64,000 nucleotides of DNA from IMGVR_UViG_3300038465_000091:159507-223506, one strand, 5' to 3'; shown: positions 26,993 to 48,737, numbered from the stretch's first letter. Program-made: numbers and translations. The notes: generated by a model not told the origin, from the letters alone.

Positions 26993-28147
26993 ATGGCAAA
27001 CAAAGTGAAGAAGGCAAATCGTGAGACCGTCCGTAAGGCTATCGTAGCCCGTCGCGAAGCTCGCAAGCAGGAAAAAGCCGCGAATTATGCAAAAATGCGC
27101 GAATGCGCGAAGTCTCCAGCGAAGTTCGCCAAGGCCCTTGACGAGCTTGTAGCGAAGACCGCACGTCAAGCCTACAGCATGGACGCCCTCCGCGAAAATC
27201 TCGGATTGGTGAAATTTGCCAAGGAAGTTCCCGCCAAGGTCCGCATCGCCGCCGCTAAGAATTACGGCAAGAAGTTTGTCCGTATCGCCGAAGAGCAGCC
27301 AGACATTCTGGCTGACGCCCTCCAGCAAGCCTACAAGGGCTTGGATGAGCAGGCAGCGGCCATGGAAATCGCCGCCGAAGCTCTGGGTATCGATCTGGGT
27401 GCCTCGCCTGCTGAGAAGGCATTCACCGACGAAGGCAAGCACGAACTTGAGCTTGGCGAAGACAAGGGCGAAGAGAAAGCGACAGAAGAAGGTCCTGATT
27501 TCGGAGCCGAAGAAGAGACCGAAGCGGAAGAAGGGGCCGATAAATTTGTATCGGATTCTGAAGCGGAGGCCGAACCTTTGCCCGAGGAAGATAAAGAAGC
27601 CAGTGGTTCCGACGCTTTTAGCACCGACCGCGACGAAGGTGGGTCGCCGAAAGCACCACAAAAGACTCAGAGCCCACAGGCTCAGGGCGAAGCGGCAAAG
27701 CAGTCGGCAGCGCAAGGCGCTGGCAAATTCGTAAAGGAAATCCCGCAGGCTCAGGGAAAGACAGCGGTCACCGAAGCAAAGCATTGTCCCGAGTGTAAAT
27801 ACCCGGGGAGAACGGTTGAACCTGAGACTGGCAAATGCCGTCATTGCAAAAAGAAAGTGATGGAGCCGTTCGACAAGAAGGCCGCAATGGGCAAGAAAGA
27901 TTTCATCGCCTTGGCGGATGCAATCAAGAACATGAGCGTTGGACCTGATGAGAAGCGAAATATCGCTGAAGGTCTGTGCGAGACGTTTCGCGCATCCAAC
28001 CCACGTTTCATGAAAGATCGTTTCATGGACTACGTTATGGGCCTCGGCGGTTCGAGTGGCGGTAAGGTGAAGCCGCAAGGAACGCCACGCCCGCGCAAGG
28101 GCGTCATTGATCCGTATGCTAGTGCTGGTGGGCATCCTTTGGAGTAA
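26993..28147 (+). CDS. Putative internal head protein
   Basis: AGGAG RBS; shares DAFSTDRDEGGSPK with ORF 1496; after KKAA carries the module MGKKDFIALADAIK...NPRFMKDRF. Confidence 0.65.
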   Translation: MANKVKKANRETVRKAIVARREARKQEKAANYAKMRECAKSPAKFAKALDELVAKTARQAYSMDALRENLGLVKFAKEVPAKVRIAAAKNYGKKFVRIAEEQPDILADALQQAYKGLDEQAAAMEIAAEALGIDLGASPAEKAFTDEGKHELELGEDKGEEKATEEGPDFGAEEETEAEEGADKFVSDSEAEAEPLPEEDKEASGSDAFSTDRDEGGSPKAPQKTQSPQAQGEAAKQSAAQGAGKFVKEIPQAQGKTAVTEAKHCPECKYPGRTVEPETGKCRHCKKKVMEPFDKKAAMGKKDFIALADAIKNMSVGPDEKRNIAEGLCETFRASNPRFMKDRFMDYVMGLGGSSGGKVKPQGTPRPRKGVIDPYASAGGHPLE

Positions 28148-28156
28148 TCATGTTTT

Positions 28157-28549
28157 ATGACCTCCAAGAAAAACGCTAAGTCGTCTCCCGCGCCATCTGA
28201 ACCGCTTCCCACCCCGACTAGTCCCGCACCTGTGGCGGTCGAAGAAAAGCTCGGGCTTCCGCACAGAATCATCAAGTTCATTGCCGCCGCATTCTCCGAA
28301 AAGGGGGAGCCTAGCAGCGCCCGCATTCTTAGTGGTTGGTTGAGTGTGTCCAGTATGGCGTTGATTTGGTTTATGGTGCGGCACATTTTCTACACCGATA
28401 ACCCAGAAAAGCTCATAACGTGGGTTGGCGGGATGCCAGCGATTATCTATGCTCTGGCGGCGTTTGCCATTAGCCCGTTTGGTCTGGCGAAGATCAGCAG
28501 TATTTGGAACAAAGATAAAGATAGGGACAAAGACGAGAGCAAAGGATGA
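28157..28549 (+). CDS. Two-TM membrane protein, holin candidate
   Basis: SSAR followed by two hydrophobic helices and a highly charged C-terminus (KDKDRDKDESKG). Confidence 0.5.
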   Translation: MTSKKNAKSSPAPSEPLPTPTSPAPVAVEEKLGLPHRIIKFIAAAFSEKGEPSSARILSGWLSVSSMALIWFMVRHIFYTDNPEKLITWVGGMPAIIYALAAFAISPFGLAKISSIWNKDKDRDKDESKG

Positions 28550-28642
28550 AGAAGTATTTCAAAAGCGTGATCGTCTGGTGCTGGGCGTGGTAGTAGTGGA
28601 CAGCAACCTGTTCGTCATCATGCGTTGGGTTAACCCGTAGTC

Positions 28643-29299
28643 TTAACGGCTTACCCACACCACTTCGGTATTGGTTTGAACCATTCCCTTATGCGTCACC
28701 AGCAGGCGGAAGGGTAACCACCTTGCTCCTCTGTTCTCGCACACAATTGCCTGTCCCTGACGCTCGCGGCACCAGCCGCCCAGATGTCTAAAATCCATGT
28801 GCTGGAATCCGTTGTACCACTTTCCAACCTTTTGATACGGAGGATCGACAAACCAAGTCGCTTTGCGGTTGGGAATGTCCGCATAGCTTTGCTGAAACAC
28901 CTGCCAGTGTCGCACCTTGTAGAGATTAGCGGCGATCCAAAGCTTCTGTTGATTCCAGCACACACGCTGGGTTGCTGTAAGCTTGGGTCGGGTTGAGGCT
29001 GGGTTGAGATGGTAGCCGATAAGGTATCGTTCCTCAGTCGATAAAGACTTGAACTCGGTGAGGGTCTGTTTGGGTTGAATGTCCGGAAGGCTGAGGATGT
29101 CCTTCTTCGACGCAGAGATCAAGTATTTCCATGTCGCTACGATCTTGGGATTGCAGTCGAAGAGCATCACGTTGCGTTCCCAATGATCGCCGTGTAAAGA
29201 GTAGCCCGCCGCCCCCGCAAATGGCTCGATGAGGGTGTCGAATTCTGGCGGTGCGTACAGTGGAGCCAACCTCTTTTTACTCCCGTAGTAAGAGAACAT
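28643..29299 (-). CDS. DNA adenine methyltransferase (Dam/D12-like)
   Basis: FSYYGSKKRLA, IEPFAGAAG (motif I) and FVDPPY (motif IV). Confidence 0.88.
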   Translation of the reverse strand: MFSYYGSKKRLAPLYAPPEFDTLIEPFAGAAGYSLHGDHWERNVMLFDCNPKIVATWKYLISASKKDILSLPDIQPKQTLTEFKSLSTEERYLIGYHLNPASTRPKLTATQRVCWNQQKLWIAANLYKVRHWQVFQQSYADIPNRKATWFVDPPYQKVGKWYNGFQHMDFRHLGGWCRERQGQAIVCENRGARWLPFRLLVTHKGMVQTNTEVVWVSR

Positions 29300-29303
29300 A
29301 GGA

Positions 29304-29861
29304 CTAATCGGGCTGTACTAGCCGCATCCCTTCTTCAACCATGTACCAGAACAACAGCTTGGAGTTGATGGTAAGGCGTCCCGCACCGCCAGCGCCGTAG
29401 CTTTGATAGCTGGTGCAAATCTCGGGAAGTTGGAACGGTGGGACGGGGAATGTCACACGGTATTCGTGTCCCCAGCGGTCCTCCCAGCAGCGAACGGAGG
29501 CGCTGTTTACGGGAGGTACGGGTAAGCCTGTCTTGTCAAAATATTCAGCGGCGAAATTGACTCCCGCTTTGTCGCCTAATTCAATAATCAGCGAGCCTTC
29601 CGCCAAGATGAAATCCAAAAACTCTTTGTTTGCGCCCTTCTTAAACAGGGCGACAAGTTTTTTGCCGACTACCGCACTGGTGACTTTAGGTGGTGGGGTG
29701 TATGTTGCGGCTTGTTCAGGTGTGGCGACAGACAAGAAGTTGCCCCGTATGGCTTTCTTGCCAATCTCGAACTCCACTACAACGTTGCCGTCCCGAAGCT
29801 TTTTAACAGGTCCCACTCCAAAGGCGGGGCTGTAGACCAAGGTATCGACCTGAAATGTCAT
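29304..29861 (-). CDS. Hypothetical protein (SH3/Tudor-like N-terminus), paralog of 30880..31584
   Basis: VYSPAFGVGPVKKL..G.VVVEF; RWGHEYRVTF...LFWYMVEEGM; leaderless TATAAT-N6-ATG. Confidence 0.7.
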   Translation of the reverse strand: MTFQVDTLVYSPAFGVGPVKKLRDGNVVVEFEIGKKAIRGNFLSVATPEQAATYTPPPKVTSAVVGKKLVALFKKGANKEFLDFILAEGSLIIELGDKAGVNFAAEYFDKTGLPVPPVNSASVRCWEDRWGHEYRVTFPVPPFQLPEICTSYQSYGAGGAGRLTINSKLLFWYMVEEGMRLVQPD

Positions 29862-29900
29862 ACCCCCATTATACCAGCCCGGGGACCAAAATGGCTAGTT

Positions 29901-30860
29901 TTACAGAAATTTGTTGTATCCACCCGTCAGGGTGTGGTCGCAGCGGTATTTCGCAATGACGTTGTATTCGGGCGTCAATTCGACCCCCAAAACCTCATCC
30001 CACCCCGCCATTAAGCAACCGATTATTTCGGACCCTGAGCCAGAGAAGGGGACGATGATCCTGCGGGTGCCCACGGACGCAGGCGGCAGTAGCAGCTTGG
30101 CGATGTAGGTGGTGAGTGAGACGGGCTTGAGCGTGGGGTGGTCATTGCGTGTGCCCTCGGGCATTCCCGCGTTACGCTCTGCGGGGTTGCTCTTGGCCGC
30201 ATAGAAGAATCTCGCTTGATCCCCGACCATGACCGCCGCCTCTTCATCCAGCAGCACATTTGTTGGGTAGCGGCCCGTGCGGGCGGGTGTCACCATATCG
30301 TTACGGATGAAGGTGCCGAGGCGAGATTGCCCCGCTTTCGTTTCGGGTAGCTCTTCGTCGCCGACCCGCGAGCCCTCAATGTTCAGTGCCCCCGAGCCGT
30401 GTTCGAGGATAGTGTCTACGTACTTTCCCTCGAAGGATTTCTTGAAGCAGACGATGGGTTCCCAGCCGGGTTTGAGCATACTCGGCCTGTAGCCTGTCCA
30501 CGTGGCGGCATTGGCCGCGTCCCCCCTCTTGCCGATCATCTTCCCGAGATCAGGGGCCTTGGGGAACCCTGTGCCGTACAGCCATGTCATCGTGTCCCAG
30601 ACCTCGAAGCCAGCGTCTTCCATGCCGACTGCCAGCCTGTGCCATGTGCGCGTGCCGCCGAATACCAAGGCGAGTGCTCCGGGCTTGAGGACGGGCAACA
30701 GAGACGCCCCCCATGCCTCGAATTGAGCATTGGTGTCCCATTTCTTGCCCATAAAGCCTAGATCGTAGGGGAAGTCGGAAAAGAGAGCGTGGAACTGAGG
30801 TCCCGAGTAGGACTTAGCCCACTCGACCACATCAGAAGTTACGAGTTTGTAGGTTGCCAT
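29901..30860 (-). CDS. DNA N4-C/N6-A methyltransferase (beta class)
   Basis: SDFPY.LGFMGKKWD (motif IV variant), WLYGTGFPK, HPTLKP, VPFSGSGSE (motif I). Confidence 0.88.
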   Translation of the reverse strand: MATYKLVTSDVVEWAKSYSGPQFHALFSDFPYDLGFMGKKWDTNAQFEAWGASLLPVLKPGALALVFGGTRTWHRLAVGMEDAGFEVWDTMTWLYGTGFPKAPDLGKMIGKRGDAANAATWTGYRPSMLKPGWEPIVCFKKSFEGKYVDTILEHGSGALNIEGSRVGDEELPETKAGQSRLGTFIRNDMVTPARTGRYPTNVLLDEEAAVMVGDQARFFYAAKSNPAERNAGMPEGTRNDHPTLKPVSLTTYIAKLLLPPASVGTRRIIVPFSGSGSEIIGCLMAGWDEVLGVELTPEYNVIAKYRCDHTLTGGYNKFL

Positions 30861-30879
30861 CCCTACTTAATACGGCATT

Positions 30880-31584
30880 TCAGGCGTTTTCGACGGGGAT
30901 ATCGGCGAGAGGAATGCCAGCGGCTCCCGTGTCGAAGAACTTCTTCTGGGCGTCGTCGGGCATGAATTCGCGGATGCGAGTAGCGTCCTGCTTGCCATTA
31001 AACGAGAATCCGTGCTCCATGAGATACCAGAACAATCCCCCTGTCCCGCCTTCGCCCGCTCCACCACGAATAAATCCGGGTTTGTTTTCTTTCCCCTTGA
31101 GAGTAGAGGGTATCGTATCCGTGGGCTCAAACTTGATCTCAGCCTGTAACCCCCACTTGCCCATAGCGGGCACTAAGTGGATGTGCGGATCGCCCGTGTA
31201 GTTGACGCCTGTCAGACTGTGCAGGTCGTTAACGACGTTGTTTTCTATCCGTTCGGGCATTTGAAGATTAAAGGTTACCCCTCGGGTTAAGTGTCCGAGA
31301 AACCATGCCGTGACGCCAGCGGCGTCGTAGGTAACATTGCTTCGCTCAAGATATGATGGGATGGATGGGGCTCTGGGGGCGGGGATGGGTCTGAGATCAG
31401 TGGTTTTAACAGAGAAGGAATCCCACTCGGGATCAGCGCCTTCTCGAAGAACCTGTGAGAGGCTTCCAGTCTGGCCGACGATGGTCACGACGCTCCCTTT
31501 GTAGATTGCTTTTTCGGGATCAGCTACAGTTTCGGCAACTTTGAGTAGATCGCCATAAACATCGCCCGTACCGCTTATACTCAT
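30880..31584 (-). CDS. Hypothetical protein, paralog of 29304..29861
   Basis: KWGLQAEIKF...LFWYLMEHGFSF; GAGGTG RBS and TATAAT at 31606-31601. Confidence 0.7.
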   Translation of the reverse strand: MSISGTGDVYGDLLKVAETVADPEKAIYKGSVVTIVGQTGSLSQVLREGADPEWDSFSVKTTDLRPIPAPRAPSIPSYLERSNVTYDAAGVTAWFLGHLTRGVTFNLQMPERIENNVVNDLHSLTGVNYTGDPHIHLVPAMGKWGLQAEIKFEPTDTIPSTLKGKENKPGFIRGGAGEGGTGGLFWYLMEHGFSFNGKQDATRIREFMPDDAQKKFFDTGAAGIPLADIPVENA

Positions 31585-31647
31585 TTCTCACCTCATCCCT
31601 ATTATACCAATTCAAAAGTTCTTTTGGGTAGGAACTCGCAAATATTT

Positions 31648-31696
31648 ATAAACCATTGAAAACAAACGAAATAAACCATTGAAAACAAACGAAATA
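31648..31696 (+). repeat. 23-bp tandem duplication ATAAACCATTGAAAACAAACGAA
   Basis: Exact copies at 31648-31670 and 31671-31693. Confidence 0.95.
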
Positions 31697-31746
31697 TAGT
31701 CAAAAATTCCTATCGATTCTGACCCATTTTTGGGTATAATAGACCC
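31678..31746 (+). promoter_or_regulatory. Early promoter cassette, copy 1 (leaderless)
   Basis: ATTGAAAACAAA.AAATATAGT...ATTCCTATCG...TTTTGGG-TATAAT-N6-ATG. Confidence 0.8.
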
Positions 31747-32412
31747 ATGAGCAAGCATGGTTGGGAACGTGGGGAGATTAAGCTGCCGAGCACGGAAGCC
31801 GTTGCCTTTCGTCACGATCTGGTCAACACCCACAATCAGATTCAAGCCCGCCTGTTCGAACGCGCCCAAATCATCTACACCCAACTCAAAGCCGCTGGTA
31901 AGGGCAAGCGGAACTTCGATTTCTACGAGGAATTCACTAAGATCATGCAGGGCGGCGTTTGGCACATCAGCGCCATCGACACGGACGGTTACGACGAACT
32001 GAGCAGCGCCCTGTTCCCCTACGACGCGAAGATCGGTCGCGAACAGCGCAAGCCAAGCGTCCCGAAGAAGAAAGATTTCAAGCAGGCGAAGCTGAGCGCG
32101 AAAGGTCTGCCTGTCGGCGGCGAAGCTGGAATTGAATTCAAGGGCAGTACCGTCCTCTGGGTGGTAGCCGAGAATAACCACAGCGTTGAACGCGCACATG
32201 ACCATGCGATGGGTAAGGCGTTTTTCCGTCGTTTGGCACAGGTAAAGTGGACGAACCGTAGCGGCGGCGAGATTGTCGGCAACGACGAATACAACCGCGA
32301 CAACGAGTCGTCGGGCAGCGGCGGAAACTACGTGACCATGCGGTTCGGTGCGGCTGAGACACAATTCAAAAAATCGTTTGGGCGTAAATTTTGGTCGGAG
32401 CGAATAAACTAA
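31747..32412 (+). CDS. Hypothetical early protein
   Basis: 221-aa ORF; W.V.ENNHSVE.AH...W...SGG...GNDEYN motif. Confidence 0.8.
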   Translation: MSKHGWERGEIKLPSTEAVAFRHDLVNTHNQIQARLFERAQIIYTQLKAAGKGKRNFDFYEEFTKIMQGGVWHISAIDTDGYDELSSALFPYDAKIGREQRKPSVPKKKDFKQAKLSAKGLPVGGEAGIEFKGSTVLWVVAENNHSVERAHDHAMGKAFFRRLAQVKWTNRSGGEIVGNDEYNRDNESSGSGGNYVTMRFGAAETQFKKSFGRKFWSERIN

Positions 32413-32579
32413 TGAGATATCAAGTGCATGTCGTGTACCCTGATCGTACCATGGTGCTGCCGCAAGAATTTGTCAGCTTTGCTGCCGCCGCAACCTCCGC
32501 AGGTCCATTGGCGAAGAACCTACAGGGCAAGGCCGCGATCCGAATCGAGCCGATGCTTGACGCCAAGGCGGGACGCTAA
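32412..32579 (+). CDS. Small hypothetical protein
   Basis: TAATG-coupled; starts MRYQVHVVYPD. Confidence 0.6.
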   Translation: MRYQVHVVYPDRTMVLPQEFVSFAAAATSAGPLAKNLQGKAAIRIEPMLDAKAGR

Positions 32580-32836
32580 TGGAACAAGTCATCATCGAAC
32601 ATCGGTTAGGCAAGTGGACCATAACGGTGCACGAAAGCTACAACTCCGTGCCTGCGAAGACGATCACGTTCGCCAACTCCGACCGTGGCTTCCCGAGCAA
32701 GGGGCACGCCATCGGTTACATCAAACGTGTCGCCAACCACACGCCTGACCGCTCCAGCGAGTTCCATATCTACCCCTACACCAACCACGAGAACAAGATT
32801 CGTTGGGACGTGATGATCTGCGACTCTGGCAACTAA
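32579..32836 (+). CDS. Hypothetical protein (85 aa)
   Basis: TAATG-coupled ORF. Confidence 0.7.
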   Translation: MEQVIIEHRLGKWTITVHESYNSVPAKTITFANSDRGFPSKGHAIGYIKRVANHTPDRSSEFHIYPYTNHENKIRWDVMICDSGN

Positions 32837-32914
32837 TTGAAAACAAACCAAATATAGTCCAAAATATTTCAAAATTCCTATCGGTTCCCGTCCAGTTTTG
32901 GGTATAATAGGGAC
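32836..32914 (+). promoter_or_regulatory. Early promoter cassette, copy 2 (leaderless)
   Basis: ATTGAAAACAAACCAAATATAGT...ATTCCTATCG...TTTTGGG-TATAAT(32903-32908)-AGGGAC-ATG. Confidence 0.8.
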
Positions 32915-33172
32915 ATGAACGCTTACAAAACAACGTCCTTACGCGGAGCATCGAGCGTCTCGCAAGACGGTGCTGGTAAACGTCTCACTTCTCAGGATGG
33001 CACCCGTTGGGCGATCAGCCGCAACCAAAAACGTGCCCTTGCCAACCACAAATTCGACGTTGTTGAATGCTGGACATTGAAACAGCGCGTAAATGGCAAG
33101 GTCGAAACTGTCGCTATTCAGCGATGCGAATCGGATGCCCGAGTTTTCTGCGGGTTGTCGGAAGGCAAATAA
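32915..33172 (+). CDS. Hypothetical early protein
   Basis: ATG 6 nt after TATAAT. Confidence 0.7.
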   Translation: MNAYKTTSLRGASSVSQDGAGKRLTSQDGTRWAISRNQKRALANHKFDVVECWTLKQRVNGKVETVAIQRCESDARVFCGLSEGK

Positions 33173-33282
33173 TGGTGCAATGTCCAAGTTGCGGAGCGTG
33201 GGCTGGTCGTTACGAAGGCTTCGCGATTCTCCGTAGATGGTTCAAATGTTTATCCTGTTTCAATATTTGGAGCGTGGGATAA
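33172..33282 (+). CDS. Tiny Zn-ribbon protein (36 aa)
   Basis: MVQCPSCG...FKCLSCFNIW; TAATG-coupled on both sides. Confidence 0.6.
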   Translation: MVQCPSCGAWAGRYEGFAILRRWFKCLSCFNIWSVG

Positions 33283-33839
33283 TGGAAAAGCTTCGGACGG
33301 TCAAAAACGATGTTACGACCACGCTGTGGTGCGGCCCAGCCGCGATCAGCGCCGTGACGGGGGAGTCCGTCAGTAAGATCATGAATATCATGCGGCAGCT
33401 ATCGGGTCGCCAGACCATCAAGAGCGTACCTTACTGGCTCCTACAGCGCACTCTGGCAACTCTGGGGTGGGAAGCTGTCACCCTCCACAAATTCGACCGC
33501 AGGAAGGTCGAGCCGAAGGTTGAACGGCTCAGCGCCAGCATCACAGTCACGTCAGGGATCGGTTCGGAGTGGGTTGAGGCGAAGCAGCGCCCCACGCTGG
33601 CACGCTACTGCCGCGAGCATCGTCAGGACTTCCAAGAGCACGCTTGCATCGTTGGCATTACGGGGCACTACGTCGCCGTCTACGGGCGGCGGTTCTGCGA
33701 CAGCCACACCAGCGAGCCCGTGTTCCTCCGCAAGTCTCCGCACCGCCGCACGCGGGTGGAGCAGGTGTTTCAAATCCGAAAGATCGGCGGGCCGAATTGG
33801 GTACCATGGAGCGGGTTGGTACCGAAGAGGAGTTTATGA
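33282..33839 (+). CDS. Papain/C39-like cysteine-peptidase-fold protein
   Basis: WCGPAAISAVTG...ITGHYVAV...FCD (Cys-His-Asp). Confidence 0.55.
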   Translation: MEKLRTVKNDVTTTLWCGPAAISAVTGESVSKIMNIMRQLSGRQTIKSVPYWLLQRTLATLGWEAVTLHKFDRRKVEPKVERLSASITVTSGIGSEWVEAKQRPTLARYCREHRQDFQEHACIVGITGHYVAVYGRRFCDSHTSEPVFLRKSPHRRTRVEQVFQIRKIGGPNWVPWSGLVPKRSL

Positions 33840-34057
33840 CAACATTCGACATCATTTGGGCACCGGAGGGGCGCTGCATCGCTACCGTTCAAGCCAACAC
33901 CATCGCCCGAGCGAAGCGCATGGCTCCGAAACCATATCGCCAGTATCTCGGCGAGCTTTACGTGCTCGAAGTTCAGTACACGCATTGCAACGGGAAAGAA
34001 ACGAAGTGCTCAGTCTTGCCGGATTGTATTCGGCACGACGGTGGATGCACTAAGTAA
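33836..34057 (+). CDS. Hypothetical protein
   Basis: GAGGAG RBS; starts MTTFDIIWAPEG. Confidence 0.65.
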   Translation: MTTFDIIWAPEGRCIATVQANTIARAKRMAPKPYRQYLGELYVLEVQYTHCNGKETKCSVLPDCIRHDGGCTK

Positions 34058-34077
34058 CTTAAAACGGGGTGTGCAAC

Positions 34078-34233
34078 ATGATGACCATCGCAGAGAAGAT
34101 TCTACTGGCGGCCAAAATCGCCGAAGCCGTCCAGAGCAAGTACAGCCTCACCACGGGGTCGCAGTTCACCGAGGAGAGCGTTGACACCATGGAACTCACC
34201 TTGACCATCGTTCAAGCGATGGACGGCATCTAA
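34078..34233 (+). CDS. Small hypothetical protein (51 aa)
   Basis: MMTIAEKILLAAKIAEAVQSKY...; not in the ORF track. Confidence 0.55.
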   Translation: MMTIAEKILLAAKIAEAVQSKYSLTTGSQFTEESVDTMELTLTIVQAMDGI

Positions 34234-34238
34234 CGCCC

Positions 34239-34321
34239 GCGAGGAGGACTCGCACCAACGGGACGCGGTAAGCCGTCCTTCCACCCGTAGCGGGGGAGCG
34301 AAAGCTGAGAACCCGCTACGG
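34239..34321 (+). ncRNA. Structured RNA element with a kink-turn
   Basis: Three hairpins. The last has a 10-bp stem (34285-34294/34312-34321), three G-A pairs, a UGA bulge and a GC/GC stem capped by GAAA. Confidence 0.55.
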
Positions 34322-34327
34322 TATATT

Positions 34328-34396
34328 ATTGAAAACAAAGCAAATATAGTGCCCAAATCCTAGCGATTTGAACATCTTTTGGGGTATAATAGGGAC
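34328..34396 (+). promoter_or_regulatory. Early promoter cassette, copy 3 (leaderless)
   Basis: ATTGAAAACAAAGCAAATATAGT...ATCCTAGCG...TTTTGGGG-TATAAT(34385-34390)-AGGGAC-ATG. Confidence 0.8.
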
Positions 34397-34975
34397 ATGA
34401 GCGAACGAGAGTACATAAAGTACCCAAACGAAGTCGTGATGGACACCCCTATTGGTCAAGCGAAGCTGGCGATCACCGACGCCAACCACATCCACATTTC
34501 AGCCGACATTGTGACGATCAGGGGCAAGGAAGTTCGCTGCTCCCTGCATGTCAACGACTATGGGTGCGGCGTCGGATTCGAACCGAGCCGTGAACAGTCC
34601 TGCCCTTCGTCCTCCTACAATTCTCTGTACGCGACCAAGGTGGGTTCGATGGGCAATTCCGCGACCTCCGCGCAGCGTGCGGCGATCATCACCGCGTGGG
34701 TGCCCGCCGTCAATGCTTTCATGGCCGCTCACCCCGAACTTCGCACCGATGCCTCGGAAGCCGACAAAAATAACTCCGCGTTGTGCATCGAGCACGATAT
34801 TGAGAAGCTCGAAAAGCAGATCGCCGAGAAGCGCGAGGAACTCCGCAAAGTGCATATCTCTGGGCGGCAGGCGAGCGGGGTCGTACAGTTTCCGTGCTGC
34901 AAGGCTTACGGTGTGGTCAACAAGAATCACGTCTGCCCCGAGCGGATGACCTTCGACAACGAGGTCATCAGCTAA
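34397..34975 (+). CDS. Hypothetical early protein
   Basis: Starts MSEREYIKY; C-terminal coiled coil and Cys cluster. Confidence 0.7.
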   Translation: MSEREYIKYPNEVVMDTPIGQAKLAITDANHIHISADIVTIRGKEVRCSLHVNDYGCGVGFEPSREQSCPSSSYNSLYATKVGSMGNSATSAQRAAIITAWVPAVNAFMAAHPELRTDASEADKNNSALCIEHDIEKLEKQIAEKREELRKVHISGRQASGVVQFPCCKAYGVVNKNHVCPERMTFDNEVIS

Positions 34976-35069
34976 TGAGCCGACGCACAGACAGAATGTG
35001 GAAAGCCGCCGCCCGCGTGACGGCGCTCCCGATCAAAGAGGAGCCCAAGATGGCAAAGGAGGCAACAAA

Positions 35070-35771
35070 ATGAAGAGAGTTCTAATCGTACTTCTGATGG
35101 GTCTGGTGCTGGTAGCGGTAGCGATGGCTGCCCAGACTCCAACTGTCGAAATCACCAAGCATGACATCAAAACAGCAAAGCCGATGTCCGAGTACATGCA
35201 GCAGGTTGGATTGCTGTATCTTGAGACGGCGGAAAATCTGGAAAAACTTGACGAGTCTGGGCAACCGCCCGACTACTGGCGTAAGGAAATGGATGGTTTA
35301 GAGAATCGCATTCAGATAACTCTGAACAAACCGCCTCGTCCCGCTGGTGACGCTCTATACTATGAGTTGCTTCGTTCGGCACGTTATGCTCGTGAGGCGT
35401 TGATTCAGGCAGACAAAAGTCAAAGCAAACTCTGGGTTCAGGCTTGGGCTGCGTGCGATGCATATGGTACGACTTCTGCCACAGAAGGTACTTTTATTAA
35501 AGCACAAGCTGACGATTGTGACGCGAAAATTAAGGCAGCGACGGCTCAAAATGAAGTCACAGCCGAGACACAGCAACAACCAGCCGCTGACCCGGCCAAG
35601 ATGCAAGCCCTCGCCGACAAGTTCAACGCCAAGGTCAAGAACACTTGGCTTATGGTCAGTGACGGCACAAACATTGGTGGCTCTAAAGACGCTTTACGGC
35701 AAGCAGGATTCACTGCCGTCGTCTTTAGCGGCGGCAAAATTGTAGATTTGGTTACGGGCACCGAAAACTAA
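35070..35771 (+). CDS. Secreted/periplasmic protein
   Basis: AAGGAGG RBS; Sec signal MKRVLIVLLMGLVLVAVAMA|AQ. Confidence 0.75.
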   Translation: MKRVLIVLLMGLVLVAVAMAAQTPTVEITKHDIKTAKPMSEYMQQVGLLYLETAENLEKLDESGQPPDYWRKEMDGLENRIQITLNKPPRPAGDALYYELLRSARYAREALIQADKSQSKLWVQAWAACDAYGTTSATEGTFIKAQADDCDAKIKAATAQNEVTAETQQQPAADPAKMQALADKFNAKVKNTWLMVSDGTNIGGSKDALRQAGFTAVVFSGGKIVDLVTGTEN

Positions 35772-35935
35772 TGAACCGCGAGAACCAGTCCGACGACATC
35801 CTGTTCGACCTGAAATTAAAGGGCGTGGTTGTCGATCCTCCGTTCCTCGGGGTAGACGTGGGATTCACTGAACTGGTGGAATTCGAGGACGGGGAAACCC
35901 GCGAAGTCAGCGTTCATCTTTTGGAGGCCCTGTAA
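35771..35935 (+). CDS. Small hypothetical protein (54 aa)
   Basis: MNRENQSDDILFDLKLKGVVVD...; overlaps the previous stop. Confidence 0.5.
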   Translation: MNRENQSDDILFDLKLKGVVVDPPFLGVDVGFTELVEFEDGETREVSVHLLEAL

Positions 35936-36601
35936 ATGCCTCTCACCACCTACTCCTGCTCGAAGTGCATGACTCCGTTCAAAGAGAATCCCGAGGTCGT
36001 CATGGATGGCGGCAACGGTCTGTGGTGCCCTCGCTGCTCGTACCAAGCCTCGGTTCGCAGCCTCAGGAACGAACTGCCGAAGGAATTCTTCATTGAGCAC
36101 ATGGCGGTGAACCCGCCGCGATGGGCTAGTGTCGGTAAGGAAAAGCCGTCTCCCGCCGCCGTCCTACTGGACGTGTGGGTGGTTCGCAAGCACAGCCGCA
36201 TCACCGATGATGTGGGCTACAGACAGTGGCCCGGACCCCAGAAGGATGTTCACTGCTGGTGGGAGTTGGAGAATGGCAAAGCTGTGGGCTGGAACGAATC
36301 ACCCTCGAAGGGCTGGAGCTTCCCCGTCATCACCCTGCACAATCTCAAGATTTGGAACATCCGTGGCGACTGCTCGGATTTCGACGGTCGGTTCTACGTG
36401 TGTGCGGAGACCAAGAAGCGGGCGGTCGAGTTGCTGGCGCAAGCAGGTCGCCGCTTCACCAGCCTGAATGAGTTCACGAAGTACGCCTCGCCCGCTTGGG
36501 GCATTGCGATGCGGAACCAGAAGCGCGAAGAGGGCGTATGGTTCACGCCTGAGGGTCAGGACGACGTGATGGGCGGCTACCGCCCAAAGAGGTTGATTTA
36601 A
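35936..36601 (+). CDS. Mosaic hypothetical protein with an N-terminal Zn ribbon
   Basis: GGAGG RBS; CSKC...CPRC; WWELENGKAVGWNESP module. Confidence 0.7.
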   Translation: MPLTTYSCSKCMTPFKENPEVVMDGGNGLWCPRCSYQASVRSLRNELPKEFFIEHMAVNPPRWASVGKEKPSPAAVLLDVWVVRKHSRITDDVGYRQWPGPQKDVHCWWELENGKAVGWNESPSKGWSFPVITLHNLKIWNIRGDCSDFDGRFYVCAETKKRAVELLAQAGRRFTSLNEFTKYASPAWGIAMRNQKREEGVWFTPEGQDDVMGGYRPKRLI

Positions 36602-36810
36602 TGGCGGGCAACTCAGGCAAGATGACGAACGAGGCTCTCGCCGCACGCGGCCCACGCATGGTGCTGGCACGGGTAGGCGCGAACGGTCAAGCCTATCGCG
36701 GCTTGGTGATCTACCGCGAAGGGCAGTGCCCGATCAGGGTGCCTTACTCGATACTTGCAAAGTCGTACTCGCTGAGCTATCTTAAGAGAGTAGGAAAGGG
36801 AAATTTATGA
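36601..36810 (+). CDS. Hypothetical protein
   Basis: Coupled ORF. Confidence 0.55.
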   Translation: MAGNSGKMTNEALAARGPRMVLARVGANGQAYRGLVIYREGQCPIRVPYSILAKSYSLSYLKRVGKGNL

Positions 36811-37088
36811 TTAGTATGAAGCGACTGAACCTCAGAGATCGAGAGTGCCCGAAGTGCGGCGGCAAGATCGGCATGATCCGCCGTGGGGGTATGCCAAAAG
36901 ACGTTCTCTGTGAACTACCACTGTACGGCTGCGTGGGCAACACGCACGTGCAGGTGAGTGGCACCTACGGCTACAGCCCCAACGATTTTCCAAAGAAGGT
37001 GAAGCCGCCTACCGCCAAGGAAATCAACAAGTTCATCGGTAGCATTCGCCGCGAAGAAGTGGCCGAAGCCGAAGAAAAGAAAATTTAG
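36807..37088 (+). CDS. Hypothetical protein with CPKC motif
   Basis: ATGA-coupled ORF. Confidence 0.6.
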   Translation: MISMKRLNLRDRECPKCGGKIGMIRRGGMPKDVLCELPLYGCVGNTHVQVSGTYGYSPNDFPKKVKPPTAKEINKFIGSIRREEVAEAEEKKI

Positions 37089-37092
37089 TCCA

Positions 37093-37213
37093 TTCCTATC
37101 CTTTTCGGCTCCGAATCGGGTATAATGGGGTGTGACATCGTTTGCTGGTAGCGAGGAATAACCAGCACCGGGGCGGACGGTGTTCCAAGCCCGTCCGCCC
37201 TACTTCCTTCTTT
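37093..37213 (+). promoter_or_regulatory. Promoter plus structured leader with a terminator-like hairpin
   Basis: TTCCTATC...GGG-TATAAT(37121-37126); hairpins 37143-37149/37161-37167 and 37171-37180/37191-37200, then a pyrimidine tract. Confidence 0.6.
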
Positions 37214-37225
37214 CAGGAGCCCATC

Positions 37226-37378
37226 ATGTGCTATATCGGTGAGCACGTCCGTACCGTCGTAGTTGACCCTCTTCAAGCCCCCGCCCCACTTCCCGGCCAA
37301 GAGCCCGAGATCGAGCCGTCATACGAGCCCGTGTTTGACGACCAGCCTGTGCTGGTGCCTGTTTACGTTAAACGGTAA
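37226..37378 (+). CDS. Small Pro/Glu-rich peptide (50 aa)
   Basis: AGGAG RBS; MCYIGEHVRTVVVDPLQAPAPLPGQEPEIEP... Confidence 0.65.
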   Translation: MCYIGEHVRTVVVDPLQAPAPLPGQEPEIEPSYEPVFDDQPVLVPVYVKR

Positions 37379-38139
37379 TGTTAGCCCCCGACTACATCTC
37401 GCCGTTCACGGCTTACCGCACGTGGCATTGGGAAATCCCAACAGGCATAACATCGCTGAATAGTGTCTCGTGGACACCACGGGAAGCTCACGTCGCCGTG
37501 TGCAGAAACAACAGACCGCATATCGCCCCTGACCTCGGTTGCACGTGCGGCATCTATGCGGCGAAGCACTGGAAACACCTGATTGACATTGGCTACGGCG
37601 GCTACGGCATTCACGGGGAAGTCGCCCTGTGGGGGATAATTGAAGAGTGCCGTCTGGGATACCGTGCTCAGTACGCCTACCCAAAATTCTTCTGCGTCCC
37701 GCCAATGATGCTCACCATGGACATGAAGATTGCTGAAGCAGGTATGGAAGCTCTCATTGCCTATAACGTCGATATCTTCGTGCTGGCAAGCAGCAAGCCC
37801 CAGCCAAATGTTGAAAAAGTTCCGCTGTGGGTGAAAGATTTCGGCTACTCCGCTCAGGGGATTGACTTCGTTGGAAAATACATTCAGCGGCTTTACTTAT
37901 TCAAAGGTGACCGTGCGGACGAAAACCCAGAAGTTGGCGACCGCCTGTGCATCAAGGGCGTGGGCATCGCCGTCGTCAAATCAGTCGCCCAGAATGAAGT
38001 CACCATCACGCTGTTCAACCAGACAATCCACCGTATCCCACGTGAGAGAATCACTTGGAATTTCCAGAATAACCGTTGGGAGTCGGACACCACAGGATCG
38101 AGCGTGGCGCTCTCCCGTGCGGCTGCTCGCGGGTTCTAA
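37378..38139 (+). CDS. Conserved-looking hypothetical protein with CTCGIYA motif
   Basis: PDYISP..AYRTW...C...H.AP...CTCGIYA...GEVALWG...GYRAQYAYP. Confidence 0.75.
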   Translation: MLAPDYISPFTAYRTWHWEIPTGITSLNSVSWTPREAHVAVCRNNRPHIAPDLGCTCGIYAAKHWKHLIDIGYGGYGIHGEVALWGIIEECRLGYRAQYAYPKFFCVPPMMLTMDMKIAEAGMEALIAYNVDIFVLASSKPQPNVEKVPLWVKDFGYSAQGIDFVGKYIQRLYLFKGDRADENPEVGDRLCIKGVGIAVVKSVAQNEVTITLFNQTIHRIPRERITWNFQNNRWESDTTGSSVALSRAAARGF

Positions 38140-38145
38140 GCCCCT

Positions 38146-38886
38146 TTATCTGTTAGCGCGAGAAACGAAATATTGATCGAAATCGGGATGATCGATACGA
38201 ATTCTAAACTCACCTAGTATAGGAGAGTCGCAACGATATATGTTCCCGAGCTTCTGAACCTTCCGCTTTGAAAATCCCGTCCCGCTCGGGTTGGCCTTGT
38301 CAATCAGACTGTGGATGAACGCACCCAACGCCTTCTCCTCAGGGTCCTTGGATTCCAGCAGTTGCTTACTTGACCTACTCATTGCACGGCGGATGTCGGG
38401 GCGGTGGAGTTTGTGAATCTCGGCTACCCGCTGGAATGAACGAGTCTTGATGTACAGGTCGATGATCGTGCTCAGGGGCACGCTCTTGATACTGTGCTCA
38501 AGCTTTGCCTGCACTAACACATCCTTCATCTTCCCCTCGGTAAACTCCTCCCCATACAGGATGAACGCACACAGCACCTTGACCGCCATGCGGATACGGA
38601 ACGAGCACACCGTCTGCGTACTGCGGTGGATGATCGCCAGTGTGTTCTGGGTCTTGCTCAACAGGTAGTAGCTCAGCAGGAGTTCCTGATCCTCTTTCTT
38701 CAAGAGGCGCAAAATCTTCAAGAACATTGGGAAATTCTCCTGAATGTAGGTGAGGATTTTTTGGTCTTCTTTTTTCTTGGGATCGGACTCTGCACTGAGA
38801 AGGGTCTGCCCTTCGAGGGCTTCTTCATCGGTTAGGAGCATTGCTCGCGAGGCGCAAATCGAATCCATATAAGGAGTATTTTCCAT
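38146..38886 (-). CDS. Sigma-70 region-4-like double-HTH protein (putative transcription factor)
   Basis: LRLLKKEDQELLLSYY...KTQNTLA..H..TQTVCSFRI..AVKVL and IIDLY..TRSFQRVAE.....RPDIRRAM. Confidence 0.55.
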   Translation of the reverse strand: MENTPYMDSICASRAMLLTDEEALEGQTLLSAESDPKKKEDQKILTYIQENFPMFLKILRLLKKEDQELLLSYYLLSKTQNTLAIIHRSTQTVCSFRIRMAVKVLCAFILYGEEFTEGKMKDVLVQAKLEHSIKSVPLSTIIDLYIKTRSFQRVAEIHKLHRPDIRRAMSRSSKQLLESKDPEEKALGAFIHSLIDKANPSGTGFSKRKVQKLGNIYRCDSPILGEFRIRIDHPDFDQYFVSRANR

Positions 38887-47477: not shown

Positions 47478-48737
47478 ATGGATTTGAATAACCCAGAAAT
47501 CAAACGCTGGACAGACAGTGGTACTGCATGTTGGGGCGTAACCGACGAATACAAGGGCGAACTGATCCTTGATTATGCGCGGCGTTTCAACCTGATGACT
47601 TTCGTCGAAACTGGAACATGGCACGGCGGCACCGTGGAGTATGTCAAGCAGCATTTCGACCAGATTCACTCCATAGAACTGTCCCCGGAGCTTGTCGAGA
47701 ATTGCAGAAAAAGATTTTCTGGTTCGCCCAACATCCACTTATATCAGGGTGACAGTGGTGAAAAGATCAAGGAGCTTTTTGGTGGTCTGAAAACTCCGAC
47801 GCTATTCTGGTTGGACGCACACCCGTCAGGCGGTGACACTGTTGGAACCTACAGTCCCTTGGAGAAGGAGCTTACGGCTATTTTTGAGAGCGGCGTCAAA
47901 GGCGTTATCCTGATTGACGACCTACAGGATTGCTGGGAACACAATTGGGCAGAAGTGGCGATGCGGACAGTCGCCAAATACAGCGGTTGGCGGCATGAAA
48001 TAACCCACGGCATCATGAGGATCGTATCCGTAGACGCCAGTGTCATCATCCCCCTGTACAACCTGCAAGACTTCGTGGGGCAAACCATCGAGTCCGCGCT
48101 CAATCAGACTCACCGATTTTTTGAAGTTATCGTCGTCAACGATGGGTCCACAGACGGGAGTCTCAATGTAGCGAAACGCTATGGAGATCGTATCATATTG
48201 ATAGATCAGCAGAACGCTGGATTGAATGCATCGCGTAACGCCGGAGCCAGAGTGTCAACGGGGACTTTCCTACTGCCGTTGGACGCCGACGACTGGATCG
48301 AGCCAACGTACCTTGAAAAGACTATCCCTTTAATGACTGAGGGCATTGGTGTAGTGTCTACCGATATGGACATATTTGGCGAGGTCAGTCGGGCGGACAT
48401 ATCTGGCGAGGTCAATCGGTTGCAGCCTATTGGTAGACCTACTCTCGAAATTCAAAAATGGGCGAACACGATGCCGTGCTGCTCCCTAATACGGCGCACA
48501 GCGTTTAACCAAGCTGGCGGCTATAGCGCCCGCCCAGACATTCAGGCTTACGGAGATTGGAATCTTTGGATTGACATTCTCAAACGCGGTTGGAAAGTCG
48601 CCTCACTAGCGGAACCCTTGTTTCACTATCGTGTGCGCCCGATATCAATGAGTTTAGAAGTATCATCAAAGCACGCTGAACTGGCGAAGGCTATTCGCCG
48701 TAATCACCCCGACCTGTTTAGGCTGGAGGAAAGATGA
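47478..48737 (+). CDS. SAM-methyltransferase-like and GT2 glycosyltransferase fusion
   Basis: FVETGTWHG...SIELS...GDS...FWLDAH...ILIDD, then SVIIPLYN...VVNDGSTD...LDADD. Confidence 0.85.
   Translation: MDLNNPEIKRWTDSGTACWGVTDEYKGELILDYARRFNLMTFVETGTWHGGTVEYVKQHFDQIHSIELSPELVENCRKRFSGSPNIHLYQGDSGEKIKELFGGLKTPTLFWLDAHPSGGDTVGTYSPLEKELTAIFESGVKGVILIDDLQDCWEHNWAEVAMRTVAKYSGWRHEITHGIMRIVSVDASVIIPLYNLQDFVGQTIESALNQTHRFFEVIVVNDGSTDGSLNVAKRYGDRIILIDQQNAGLNASRNAGARVSTGTFLLPLDADDWIEPTYLEKTIPLMTEGIGVVSTDMDIFGEVSRADISGEVNRLQPIGRPTLEIQKWANTMPCCSLIRRTAFNQAGGYSARPDIQAYGDWNLWIDILKRGWKVASLAEPLFHYRVRPISMSLEVSSKHAELAKAIRRNHPDLFRLEER

What the first reader, a model, noticed from the sequence alone, without database searches (positions are those of the whole stretch)
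31648..34396. Repeated ~70-bp promoter cassettes giving leaderless mRNAs, with IHF-like upstream boxes
Seen: three copies (31678, 32836, 34328; partial at 37093) of ATTGAAAACAAA-N2-AAATATAGT...TCCTA(T/G)CG...TTTTGGG-TATAAT-N6-ATG with no RBS and no TTGACA. The N6 spacing recurs at 29861, 30860 (TATTAA), 10242 and 9254. The upstream box TAAACCATTGAAA / CAACTAATTGAAA is one mismatch from the IHF consensus YAANNNNTTGATW and is tandemly duplicated at 31648. Inference: early genes are leaderless and the cassettes may act as recombination units that shuffle accessory genes. I recall TTGAAAACAAA motifs in Acidobacteriota DNA, which is an unverified host hint.
Basis: partly seen in the sequence, partly recalled or inferred. 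Interest (0 to 1): 0.6.

Follow-up and report, generated by a model that had tools for sequence, protein, structure and literature searches.

The report
Portable leaderless promoter modules, jumbo phage
The repeats are copies of one phage promoter module that starts transcripts right at the ATG of the first gene and marks the places where related giant soil phages, probably of Acidobacteriota, have gained or lost accessory genes; this is a new variant of a known kind of phage regulatory cassette.

Summary
The window is the last 64 kb of a 223.5-kb IMG/VR phage record, about 320 kb when complete. The three roughly 75-nt repeats belong to a family of about 20 sites in that record and more than 40 non-redundant sites in related peat and permafrost phage contigs.

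The module has five parts:
- a distal box, TGAAAACAAA, often followed by AAATATAGT
- a conserved box TCCTAKCG at -39 to -32, where a -35 element would be; it is not TTGACA
- a 17-nt spacer
- a -10 element, (T/G)GGTATAAT
- a 5-7-nt G-rich stretch

In half of all instances, an ATG that opens a real ORF follows directly (random expectation 1.4%).

Leaderless expression is well supported by sequence statistics and conservation, but no transcript start was mapped.

The cassettes head operons of unknown-function genes in a hyperplastic region that is 0 to 10 kb long in relatives. One cassette is a clean chimera of two cassettes that flank an extra gene in a relative. This matches the PeSL cassettes of T4-type phages.

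The IHF reading is weak.

The Acidobacteriota hint holds. The only database relative is Tunturiibacter phage Tunturi_5, and the distal box recurs 16-18 times in two Acidobacteriota MAGs.

The parts
31648..31693 (+). Exact tandem duplication (2 x 23 nt) carrying two copies of the distal box ATTGAAAACAAA. It lies between two divergent promoters.
   Evidence: (D3)
31601..31650 (-). Leftward promoter of the same family (TCCTACCC box, TGGTATAAT). It has a 16-nt leader with a GAGGTG Shine-Dalgarno sequence in front of gene 30880-31584.
   Evidence: 40 bits
31678..31746 (+). Cassette P1: distal box, AAATATAGT, A-tract, TCCTATCG, 17-nt spacer, GGGTATAAT, AGACCC. The ATG at 31747 opens a 221-aa ORFan.
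   Evidence: (58 bits)
32836..32914 (+). Cassette P2. It starts on the stop codon of gene 32579-32836 and has an exact 10-nt insertion between the distal box and TCCTATCG. The ATG at 32915 opens an 85-aa ORFan.
   Evidence: (53 bits)
34234..34323 (+). Three stem-loops after gene 34078-34233. The last is a 10-bp GC-rich stem followed by a U-rich run and is terminator-like. It is conserved in L013 and L031.
   Evidence: z -2.7 to -3.3
34328..34396 (+). Cassette P3. The ATG at 34397 opens a 192-aa ORF (family F3). It is a chimera of two cassettes of relative L031.
   Evidence: (48 bits)
37077..37126 (+). Core-only promoter P4 (TCCTATCC, GGGTATAAT) without a distal box. It is not fused to an ATG.
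   Evidence: 39 bits
37132..37215 (+). Conserved short transcript or leader made from P4: two hairpins, the second followed by a U-tract. It lies upstream of genes 37226-37378 and 37378-38139.
   Evidence: 3 pairs with compensatory changes
29868..29917 (-). Family promoter (ACTAGCC box, TGGTATAAT) followed by N6 and the ATG at 29861, which opens a 185-aa ORF.
   Evidence: 39 bits
10243..10262 (-). Extended -10 promoter (TGTGGTATCAT) followed by N6 and the ATG at 10242 (143-aa ORF). It has no TCCTA box.
28148..38145 (.). Hyperplastic region. Its accessory and ORFan gene content differs in every relative, and it is absent in Tunturi_5. It includes two DNA methyltransferase genes (28643-29299 and 29901-30860, both on the minus strand).
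26993..28147 (+). Conserved left flank gene (384 aa; homologue of the C-terminal part of Tunturi_5 virion protein gp345).
38146..38886 (-). Conserved right flank gene: exonuclease homologue, 92-94% aa identity in close relatives and 54.7% to Tunturi_5 gp346.

Best explanation
The repeats are copies of one strong, phage-specific promoter module read by the host's primary-sigma RNA polymerase. The near-perfect -10 element, (T/G)GGTATAAT, fixes the start site 7 nt downstream. In about half of the modules that base is the A of the first gene's ATG, so the mRNA has no leader and no Shine-Dalgarno sequence. Later genes in the same operons keep ordinary GGAG-type ribosome sites. The normal -35 hexamer is replaced by a conserved box, TCCTAKCG, at -39 to -32. 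Upstream of it lie an A-tract and, in the full cassettes, a distal box, TGAAAACAAA, held in helical phase with the core. The most likely reading is that the -10 element does most of the work and that one or two DNA-binding factors (host or phage, not identified) read the two boxes. Because the roughly 75-nt module is the only sequence shared by otherwise unrelated operons and ends exactly at the ATG, it also serves as portable homology. Recombination between two modules inserts, deletes or swaps whole genes, which then arrive already fitted with transcription and translation start signals. This is the mechanism described for PeSL cassettes of T4-type phages, here in leaderless form, in a roughly 320-kb phage lineage related to Tunturiibacter phage Tunturi_5 (host phylum Acidobacteriota). 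Shown here: the motif family, its geometry, its conservation, the ATG fusion, the variable gene content and the chimeric cassette. Inferred: promoter activity, the start site, early timing and the identity of the factors.
For: About 20 sites score above 28 bits in the record and none in the reversed control. All of them point at downstream genes and cluster in small-gene regions rather than in the long structural blocks. The same module occurs in at least 15 other IMG/VR contigs. Of 46 non-redundant promoters, 23 have an ATG opening an ORF of at least 40 codons at N5-7 (18 at N6), against 1.4% at random positions. In a 12-cassette alignment from six or more genomes, the boxes, the -10 element and the ATG are invariant, and homology stops at the ATG in front of different genes. 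Genes inside the operons have GGAG/GAGG 6-12 nt upstream. No phage RNA polymerase or sigma domain was found in the record or in six partial relatives. The distance from distal box to TCCTA is 8, 18 or 28 nt in 15 of 19 cases. The region between the conserved flanks measures 0 kb in Tunturi_5, about 1.9 kb in L008, about 6.5 kb in L013 and 10 kb here. The first gene after the first cassette differs in all four close genomes. P3 is 36/39 identical to L031 cassette a upstream of the box, against 14/43 to cassette b. Downstream of the box it matches cassette b and shares its gene, and L031 carries a glycosyltransferase gene between a and b. Host side: Acidobacteria are reported to have 9.7-19.4% leaderless genes (PMC3160421), and TATAAT-N6-ATG gives 33 hits against 11 at N11 in four Acidobacteriota genomes. 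PeSL mechanism: PMC2839356, PMC4122927.
Against: No transcript 5' end was mapped. The only RNA-library contig at a cassette (34211-34424, depth 2.6) runs across the terminator and P3, which means either read-through or DNA carry-over. The TCCTAKCG box is unlike the canonical TTGACA seen in candidate host DNA, so unaided recognition by host polymerase is not assured. About half of the gene-content differences between relatives do not lie at a cassette. Conserved promoters next to fast-evolving genes would give homology ending at the ATG even without any special recombination role. The record is 71% complete, so a phage sigma or activator could lie in the missing part. Two more distant relatives (Tunturi_5 and a 455-kb contig) do encode an ECF-type sigma.
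Confidence: 0.7

Rival explanations
1. These are middle-type promoters that need a phage factor. TCCTAKCG would be the site of a phage-encoded activator or sigma-appropriating protein, as the MotA box is in T4. The few canonical TTGACA-N17-TAnnnT sites would then be the true immediate-early promoters.
For: The box replaces the -35 hexamer and is invariant across the clade. The candidate host uses canonical TTGACA. A handful of canonical promoters exist in the phage: 18 hits against 7 in the control, some intergenic and some also fused to an ATG. The promoter class is confined to one sub-clade and is missing from Tunturi_5 and the 455-kb relative, as expected for a co-evolving factor and site pair.
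Against: No candidate factor was identified. The modules head operons of unknown-function genes in hyperplastic regions, which in T4-type phages are early (PMC2839356). The strong -10 element, the T-tract and the A-rich upstream DNA could suffice without a -35 element.
Confidence: 0.3
2. The promoters depend on IHF. The distal box would be an IHF or HU site (host IHF or the phage's own HU/IHF-fold protein) that bends upstream DNA onto the polymerase.
For: Three of four copies in the record are one mismatch from WATCAANNNNTTR, with a T-rich flank. The helical phasing of the box fits an architectural protein. The phage encodes a 105-aa HU/IHF-fold protein with the beta-arm proline. Its best NCBIfam models are IHF alpha (E 3e-8, far below the cut-off), and it lies in an operon driven by a full cassette.
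Against: By my estimate the consensus with one mismatch is expected about 150 times in this genome by chance. The YAA half-site is the stop codon of the upstream gene in P2, L013_a and L008_a, is absent in P3, and is absent from all host copies of the box, where only TTGAAAACAAA..AAATAWAGT is conserved. The IHF consensus comes from enterobacteria.
Confidence: 0.15
3. The cassettes are promoters only. Their coincidence with variable gene content would be passive: constrained regulatory DNA next to fast-turnover genes, with indels made by illegitimate recombination anywhere.
For: Several differences lie away from cassettes, for example window 34998-35935 (absent in L013 and L031) and 33836-34057 (absent in L013). 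Promoters of the same family in conserved contexts show no rearrangement (G000 65743 and 64767 against L020 and L038).
Against: The left-half/right-half chimera of P3 relative to the two L031 cassettes that flank an extra gene is the specific product expected from homologous exchange within the shared box. Junctions fall exactly at the ATG in four genomes.
Confidence: 0.25
4. The genes are not leaderless. They would be translated from longer read-through transcripts, with the G-rich AGGGAC acting as a weak ribosome-binding site.
For: P2 has no terminator upstream, so P1 transcripts should read through it. An RNA-library contig crosses P3.
Against: The G-run lies only 1-3 nt from the ATG, too close for Shine-Dalgarno pairing. 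The fixed 5-7-nt distance from a perfect -10 element in 23 of 46 promoters, always with ATG, is the signature of leaderless genes (PMC3160421, PMC12340547).
Confidence: 0.08

Closest known systems
PeSL (promoter-early stem-loop) cassettes of T4-type phages (Arbiol et al. 2010, PMC2839356; Comeau et al. 2014, PMC4122927)
   Same: Repeated regulatory motif of about 70-100 nt. It begins at the stop codon of the upstream gene, has an AT-rich upstream part and a strong promoter, and sometimes a terminator stem-loop. It is concentrated in hyperplastic regions in front of ORFans. Indels between relatives are flanked by cassettes, leaving a chimeric single cassette.
   Different: There is no canonical -35 hexamer; the conserved TCCTAKCG box takes its place. 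There is no Shine-Dalgarno sequence, because the module ends at the ATG. A phased distal box is present. A stem-loop is seen only at P3. The phage is not a T4-type phage and the host phylum differs. Mini-circles were not examined.
Leaderless genes with the -10 element next to the ORF (Actinobacteria, Deinococcus-Thermus; Zheng et al. 2011, PMC3160421; PMC12340547), and the leaderless middle/late transcripts of Thermus phage phiYS40 (Sevostyanova et al. 2007; I did not read this paper, it is cited in PMC12340547 and I recall its content)
   Same: TAnnnT/TATAAT lies 5-7 nt before an ATG, there is no Shine-Dalgarno sequence, and ATG is the start codon.
   Different: Here the arrangement is part of a long, repeated, mobile-looking module with two extra upstream boxes. 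It occurs in a phage of a phylum where phage transcription signals have not been described.
T4 middle promoters (MotA box plus sigma-70 -10 element; summarised in PMC6024815)
   Same: A host-type -10 element is combined with a phage-specific box in place of the -35 hexamer.
   Different: The box sequence and position differ (centred near -36, not -30). No MotA or AsiA homologue was sought or found. Dependence on a factor is untested.
Tunturiibacter phage Tunturi_5 (PP885688.1; PMC11924767)
   Same: It is the only relative among 50,697 phage records. 66 of 200 genes are shared at a median 42% aa identity with long synteny. It has a jumbo genome of about 309 kb with many tRNA genes and comes from cold acidic soils.
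   Different: It lacks the promoter class, the distal box, any TATAAT-N-ATG arrangement and the whole hyperplastic region. It encodes an ECF sigma that was not found here.

Membership tests
PeSL regulatory cassettes | Repeated motif containing a sigma-70-like promoter with both -35 and -10 consensus hexamers | tested here: not met
   The -10 element is consensus, but the -35 position holds TCCTAKCG rather than TTGACA.
PeSL regulatory cassettes | AT-rich stretch upstream of the -35 region, often starting at the upstream gene's stop codon | tested here: met
   P2, L013_a and L008_a begin on the stop codon.
PeSL regulatory cassettes | Stem-loop (terminator or attenuator) as part of the cassette | tested here: inconclusive
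   A strong conserved hairpin plus U-rich run lies upstream of P3, L013_b and L031_a. None is present at P2. P1 sits in a divergent promoter region.
PeSL regulatory cassettes | Preferential location in hyperplastic regions, directly upstream of ORFans | tested here: met
PeSL regulatory cassettes | Indels between related phages bounded by cassettes, leaving a chimeric cassette | tested here: met
   L031 a-gene-b against window P3: 36/39 versus 14/43 identity upstream of the box, with the reverse pattern downstream.
PeSL regulatory cassettes | Shine-Dalgarno sequence and start codon at the 3' edge | tested here: not met
   The ATG follows the -10 element by 5-7 nt with no Shine-Dalgarno sequence.
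PeSL regulatory cassettes | Excised mini-circles | not testable with these tools
   Only contigs could be laid, and no joints were seen.
Leaderless mRNA genes | -10 hexamer (TAnnnT) ending 5-8 nt before the start codon, far more often than by chance | tested here: met
   23 of 46 promoters against 1.4% at random; 6 hits against 0.46 in shuffles.
Leaderless mRNA genes | No Shine-Dalgarno sequence; AUG as start codon | tested here: met
   All 23 starts are ATG, and the intervening 5-7 nt leave no room for a spaced Shine-Dalgarno sequence.
Leaderless mRNA genes | Transcript 5' end at the A of AUG | not testable with these tools
   Metatranscriptome contigs were too sparse, and contigs cannot show ends.
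IHF binding site | Match to WATCAANNNNTTR with an A/T-rich flank | tested here: inconclusive
   There is one mismatch in 3 of 4 copies. The TTR half is explained by stop codons in several copies and is absent in host copies of the box.
IHF binding site | Binding and bending by IHF | not testable with these tools
   Needs a gel shift or footprint.
T4-type middle (MotA-dependent) promoters | Phage activator plus co-activator that remodel sigma region 4 | not tested
   No family search was made for MotA or AsiA. A syntenic ORFan at the sigma locus of Tunturi_5 gave an uninformative model.

The most novel reading that the evidence does not exclude
The distal box (TTGAAAACAAA-NN-AAATAWAGT) is a recognition site shared between the phage promoter modules and a dispersed, AT-rich, 200-400-nt intergenic repeat. 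That repeat is present in 16-18 copies in two Acidobacteriota genomes but is not found across the phylum. One lineage-specific DNA-binding protein, host or phage, would read both. Either the phage plugs its accessory operons into a host regulatory or nucleoid system, or the host repeats act as sensors or decoys for a phage factor. In either case the shared box could also be a point of exchange between phage and host DNA.
Probability: 0.2. Interest if true: 0.75.

Novelty: new variant of a known kind. Interest (0 to 1): 0.55.

Why it matters
Almost nothing is known about how phages of Acidobacteriota, a dominant soil phylum, are transcribed. Papers PMC11924767 describes the first isolates and does not mention promoters. 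This module gives a concrete, testable promoter consensus for a family of roughly 320-kb soil phages. It shows that leaderless expression is built into their accessory operons. It also extends the PeSL idea, that regulatory cassettes double as recombination handles for gene shuffling, beyond T4-type phages. In this form the swapped gene needs no ribosome-binding site of its own. The distal box shared with host repeats is a lead to a host or phage factor and supports host assignment. The module could also serve as a genetic part for Acidobacteriota, which lack tools.

Tried and rejected
- RNA evidence: 2 runs on record as RNA hold small parts of the stretch. Laid on 30900-36800, two of the three RNA runs gave two perfect contigs each and the third only a 33-nt partial match; none is informative on starts.
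- Tandem upstream promoter: TTGAAA as a -35 element with AAAAAT as a -10 element was flagged by the consensus scan. I rejected it because the would-be -10 element is not conserved (CCAAAT, CTGAAT, GCATAT) and the first T of TTG varies.
- TTGAAA-N10-TATAGT inside the box as a promoter: the spacer is too short.
- Canonical sigma-70 promoters in the region are not enriched: 10 against 7.4 +/- 2.6.
- Phage sigma or RNA polymerase: Pfam Sigma70_r2, Sigma70_r4 and Rpb2_6 gave nothing, and the T7-type RNA polymerase model gave nothing either, though its control was also silent.
- ORFan at the position of the Tunturi_5 sigma gene (G000 56807-57472): no Pfam or PHROG hit and no similarity to the sigma. 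The AlphaFold model from 3 sequences had pLDDT 48.6, so no fold search was made. A 455-kb relative has both this ORFan and a sigma, so the replacement idea is weak.
- Rfam: no family in the window or in the host repeats. No tRNA in the window or in the host loci.
- Host repeat as CRISPR array, rRNA or tRNA promoter, or inverted-repeat transposon: there is one box per locus, no RNA genes nearby, the flanking genes are unrelated housekeeping genes, and I saw no terminal inverted repeats by eye.
- Box as a phylum-wide regulatory site: rejected. Only 2 single near-matches turned up in 300 other genomes of the phylum, against 3 in the control.
- Pfam and PHROGs on the genes behind the cassettes: nothing beyond two marginal PHROG hits.
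- Megablast of the region against phage records: no match.
Full report
**What the window is.** The window is bases 159507-223506 of a 223.5-kb IMG/VR virus record that CheckV rates 71% complete. Partial relatives give the same implied size of about 320 kb. GC content is about 53%. Independent peat and permafrost metagenomes from several studies hold the stretch.

**The observation.** GGTATAAT-N6-ATG is 13-fold over shuffles in the window. The 12-mer of the distal box occurs exactly only at the cassettes.

**A promoter family, not three repeats.** I scanned the whole record, laid out. This showed about 24 sites sharing TCCTA(G/T)CG, a 17-nt gap and GGTATAAT, preceded by an A/T-rich stretch.
- A 50-nt weight matrix built from them finds about 20 sites at 28-58 bits. 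The reversed sequence never exceeds 7 bits.
- All sites point at downstream genes. They lie in the small-gene parts of the genome (0-66 kb, 123-134 kb, 189-197 kb) and not in the long structural blocks.
- Two sub-types are visible. One has TCCTAGC(G/C)AAAA...TGGTATTAT.
- A fourth full cassette with the distal box lies outside the window at G000 48396-48470 (-). A variant lies at 52191 (-).

**Geometry.** If the transcript starts 7 nt after the -10 hexamer, the parts sit as follows:
- TCCTAKCG at -39 to -32
- the A-tract at about -46 to -40
- AAATATAGT at -54 to -46
- TTGAAAACAAA at -67 to -57

The -35 position matches TTGACA at no more than 3 of 6 positions at any allowed spacing, on my own reading. 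Canonical sigma-70 pairs are not enriched in the region and are few in the genome: 18 against 7 in a reversed control.

**Conservation in relatives.** Exact-pattern scans of IMG/VR found the core in 34 stretches and the distal box in 6. Two of these (L010, L015) are the same phage.
- The weight matrix recovers 47 sites in these loci.
- I aligned 12 full cassettes from at least six genomes. TGAAAAC, AA, AAATATA, T.CTA, G.TT, the T-run, GGGTATAATAG and ATG are invariant.
- Similarity ends exactly at the ATG and about 10 nt upstream of the distal box.
- The coding sequences that follow are unrelated to one another.

**Leaderless layout.** Among 46 non-redundant promoters above 25 bits, 23 have an ATG that opens an ORF of at least 40 codons at 5-7 nt after the hexamer (18 at exactly 6). 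At random positions in the same DNA the figure is 1.4%.
- Other promoters of the family carry ordinary leaders with GGAG/GAGG, for example 31601 (-) and G000 52191 and 134227.
- Genes inside the operons have such sites 6-12 nt upstream. The host therefore uses both modes, and only the first gene of an operon is leaderless.
- Further extended -10 sites without the TCCTA box are also fused to ATGs: G000 3755, 49867, 59455, 65788, 141854 and 169755, the last being window 10242.
- Acidobacteria were scored at 9.7-19.4% leaderless genes in all three genomes examined by Zheng et al. (PMC3160421).
- In four Acidobacteriota genomes TATAAT-N6-ATG gives 33 hits, about 5 of them inside a repeat. The N11 spacing gives 11, and reversed controls give 1 and 0.
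- Direct proof is missing. Two RNA runs gave two perfect contigs each on the stretch. One (34211-34424) crosses the terminator and P3, which could be read-through or DNA carry-over.

**Who transcribes.** The consensus -10 element argues for a primary sigma. No Sigma70_r2, Sigma70_r4 or Rpb2 domain was found in the record, and the T7-type RNA polymerase model also gave nothing, though its control was silent too. No Sigma70_r2 domain was found in six partial relatives of the sub-clade either.
- The more distant Tunturi_5 and a 455-kb relative do encode an ECF-type sigma. They lack this promoter class.
- The TCCTAKCG box is thus specific to one sub-clade. This fits a factor and site pair that evolves together, but I could not name the factor.
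- The ORFan that sits where Tunturi_5 has its sigma gave nothing.

**The distal box.** Across 19 non-redundant promoters, the gap between TGAAAACAAA and TCCTA is 8 nt (3 cases), 18 (11), 19 (2), 20 (1), 28 (1) and 41 (1, the second tandem copy). The steps are one helical turn. P2 differs from P1 by an exact 10-nt insertion. This is the behaviour of a face-specific protein site.

The IHF reading rests on one mismatch to a degenerate consensus.
- In P2, L013_a and L008_a the 'TAA' half is the stop codon of the upstream gene, as in PeSLs.
- The half-site is missing in P3 and in every host copy of the box.
- The phage does encode a 105-aa HU/IHF-fold protein with the arm proline. It is weakly closest to IHF-alpha models and lies in an operon driven by a full cassette. 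This keeps the idea alive, but at low odds.

**Host.** Two lines of evidence agree.

First, an exact scan of one genome per species (185,579 species) for the 20 specified bases of the box gave 23 loci.
- 15 are in genomes of 22-38% GC. By my estimate about 12 are expected there by chance.
- 8 are in contigs of 62-66% GC, where I estimate fewer than 0.01 are expected.
- Seven of the eight are Acidobacteriota MAGs: an 'Acidobacteria bacterium' from Lake Pavin sediment, a Terriglobia MAG and a Ca. Solibacter MAG. The eighth carries an implausible Arcobacter label for 66% GC.
- The contigs are chromosomal, with flanking groESL (with a CIRCE operator), a hopanoid-type radical-SAM gene, an AddA-type helicase and others.

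Second, the exonuclease flank gene hits only Tunturiibacter phage Tunturi_5 among 50,697 phage records. In addition, 66 of my 200 gene calls have homologues there in long syntenic runs. Tunturi_5 is a 309-kb phage isolated on an Acidobacteriota strain from tundra soil (PMC11924767).

**The host repeat.** Allowing two mismatches, the box occurs 16 and 18 times in two of the MAGs, with none for the reversed control.
- It always lies inside an AT-rich 200-400-nt intergenic repeat whose neighbouring genes all differ.
- The repeat is not in Rfam.
- The box is not general to the phylum: 2 single near-matches in 300 other genomes, against 3 in the control.
- I do not know what this repeat is. Only the box, plus 2-3 flanking bases, is shared with the phage.

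**Recombination.** The stretch 28.1-38.1 kb lies between two conserved genes.
- In Tunturi_5 these genes are adjacent.
- In L008/L025 they are about 1.9 kb apart with one cassette.
- In L013 the gap is about 6.5 kb, and L031 holds a different gene set.
- The gene fused to the first cassette differs in all four close genomes.
- In L013 the F3 gene has a 76-aa N-terminal extension that starts at the cassette ATG.
- P2 plus its first gene is an insertion relative to L013.

The clearest case is L031. It has terminator, cassette a, a 361-aa PMT_2-type glycosyltransferase gene, cassette b and then F3. The window has terminator, P3 and F3. P3 equals a on the left of the box (36/39 identical, against 14/43 for b) and equals b on the right. 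This is the outcome drawn in Figure 3 of Arbiol et al. for PeSL-mediated deletion or insertion.

Other differences lie away from cassettes, so cassettes are one route among several. The window's own extra block carries two DNA methyltransferase genes. The cargo therefore looks like accessory and anti-defence functions.

**Verdict.** The finding is a real, well-defined regulatory module. It works like a PeSL cassette and like a leaderless promoter at once. It fails two defining PeSL features (a canonical -35 hexamer and a Shine-Dalgarno sequence), so I file it as a new variant rather than a member. Its most unusual features are the sub-clade-specific box over the -35 region and the phased distal box shared with a dispersed repeat of certain Acidobacteriota genomes.

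Noticed in passing
L068-L095 (G001, G003); also L043, L048, L055, L061, L063-L065: A dispersed, AT-rich, 200-400-nt intergenic repeat is present in 16-18 copies in two GC-rich Acidobacteriota MAGs. It contains the phage's distal box, a TAnnnT hexamer, the block TATAGCATACGyTGTCAAG and a GTTTTCA...TGAAAAC hairpin. It is not in Rfam, and neither its nature nor whether it is transcribed is known.
   Followed up: partly
window 37132-37215 (+); L008 3008-3090, L013 5885-5966, L031 8852-8934 (-): Promoter P4 drives a conserved transcript of about 85 nt with two hairpins (compensatory changes in both) and a U-tract terminator. In two relatives no gene follows it, so it may be a small RNA or an attenuating leader.
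   Followed up: partly
window 28643-29299 (-) and 29901-30860 (-): Two DNA methyltransferase genes (D12-class N6-adenine, and N6_N4 type) lie in the leftward accessory block, which is unique to this phage among the relatives compared. They are probably anti-restriction cargo.
   Followed up: partly
L031 11208-12293 (-): The gene held between two cassettes in a relative is a PMT_2 / family-39-type membrane glycosyltransferase. It may modify the cell surface.
   Followed up: no
G000:C1:44594-44911 (-) (L006 1483-1800): The phage encodes a 105-aa HU/IHF-fold protein, weakly closest to IHF-alpha models, in the operon behind the fourth full cassette.
   Followed up: partly
G000:C1:56807-57472 (-) (L115 807-1472): A 221-aa ORFan occupies the position next to the gp212 homologue where Tunturi_5 has an ECF sigma gene. 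It is conserved (66-90%) in two relatives. The structure model was too poor to read.
   Followed up: partly
G000:C1 about 123-134 kb (outside the window): k-mers typical of tRNA T-arms and D-arms are strongly enriched in intergenic DNA, pointing to a large tRNA gene cluster (Tunturi_5 has 43). Several family promoters lie in it. ARAGORN was not run there.
   Followed up: no
G000:C1:130681 (+), 64767 (-); L036 10910, L020 816, L038 4357: Some family promoters are followed by conserved non-ATG leaders shared between relatives, possibly further non-coding RNAs or structured 5' UTRs.
   Followed up: no
window 58086-63773 (+): A 1895-aa protein has an N-terminal part 39% identical to Tunturi_5 gp350, which is annotated as a DarB-like antirestriction protein.
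   Followed up: no
window 34211-34424: A contig from a metatranscriptome library (depth 2.6) spans the terminator hairpins and cassette P3. It reflects either read-through transcription or DNA carry-over.
   Followed up: no
L053 / L066 (G004): A MAG labelled Arcobacter has 66% GC and carries the box upstream of a canonical TTGACA-N17-CATAGT promoter. The taxonomic label looks wrong.
   Followed up: no
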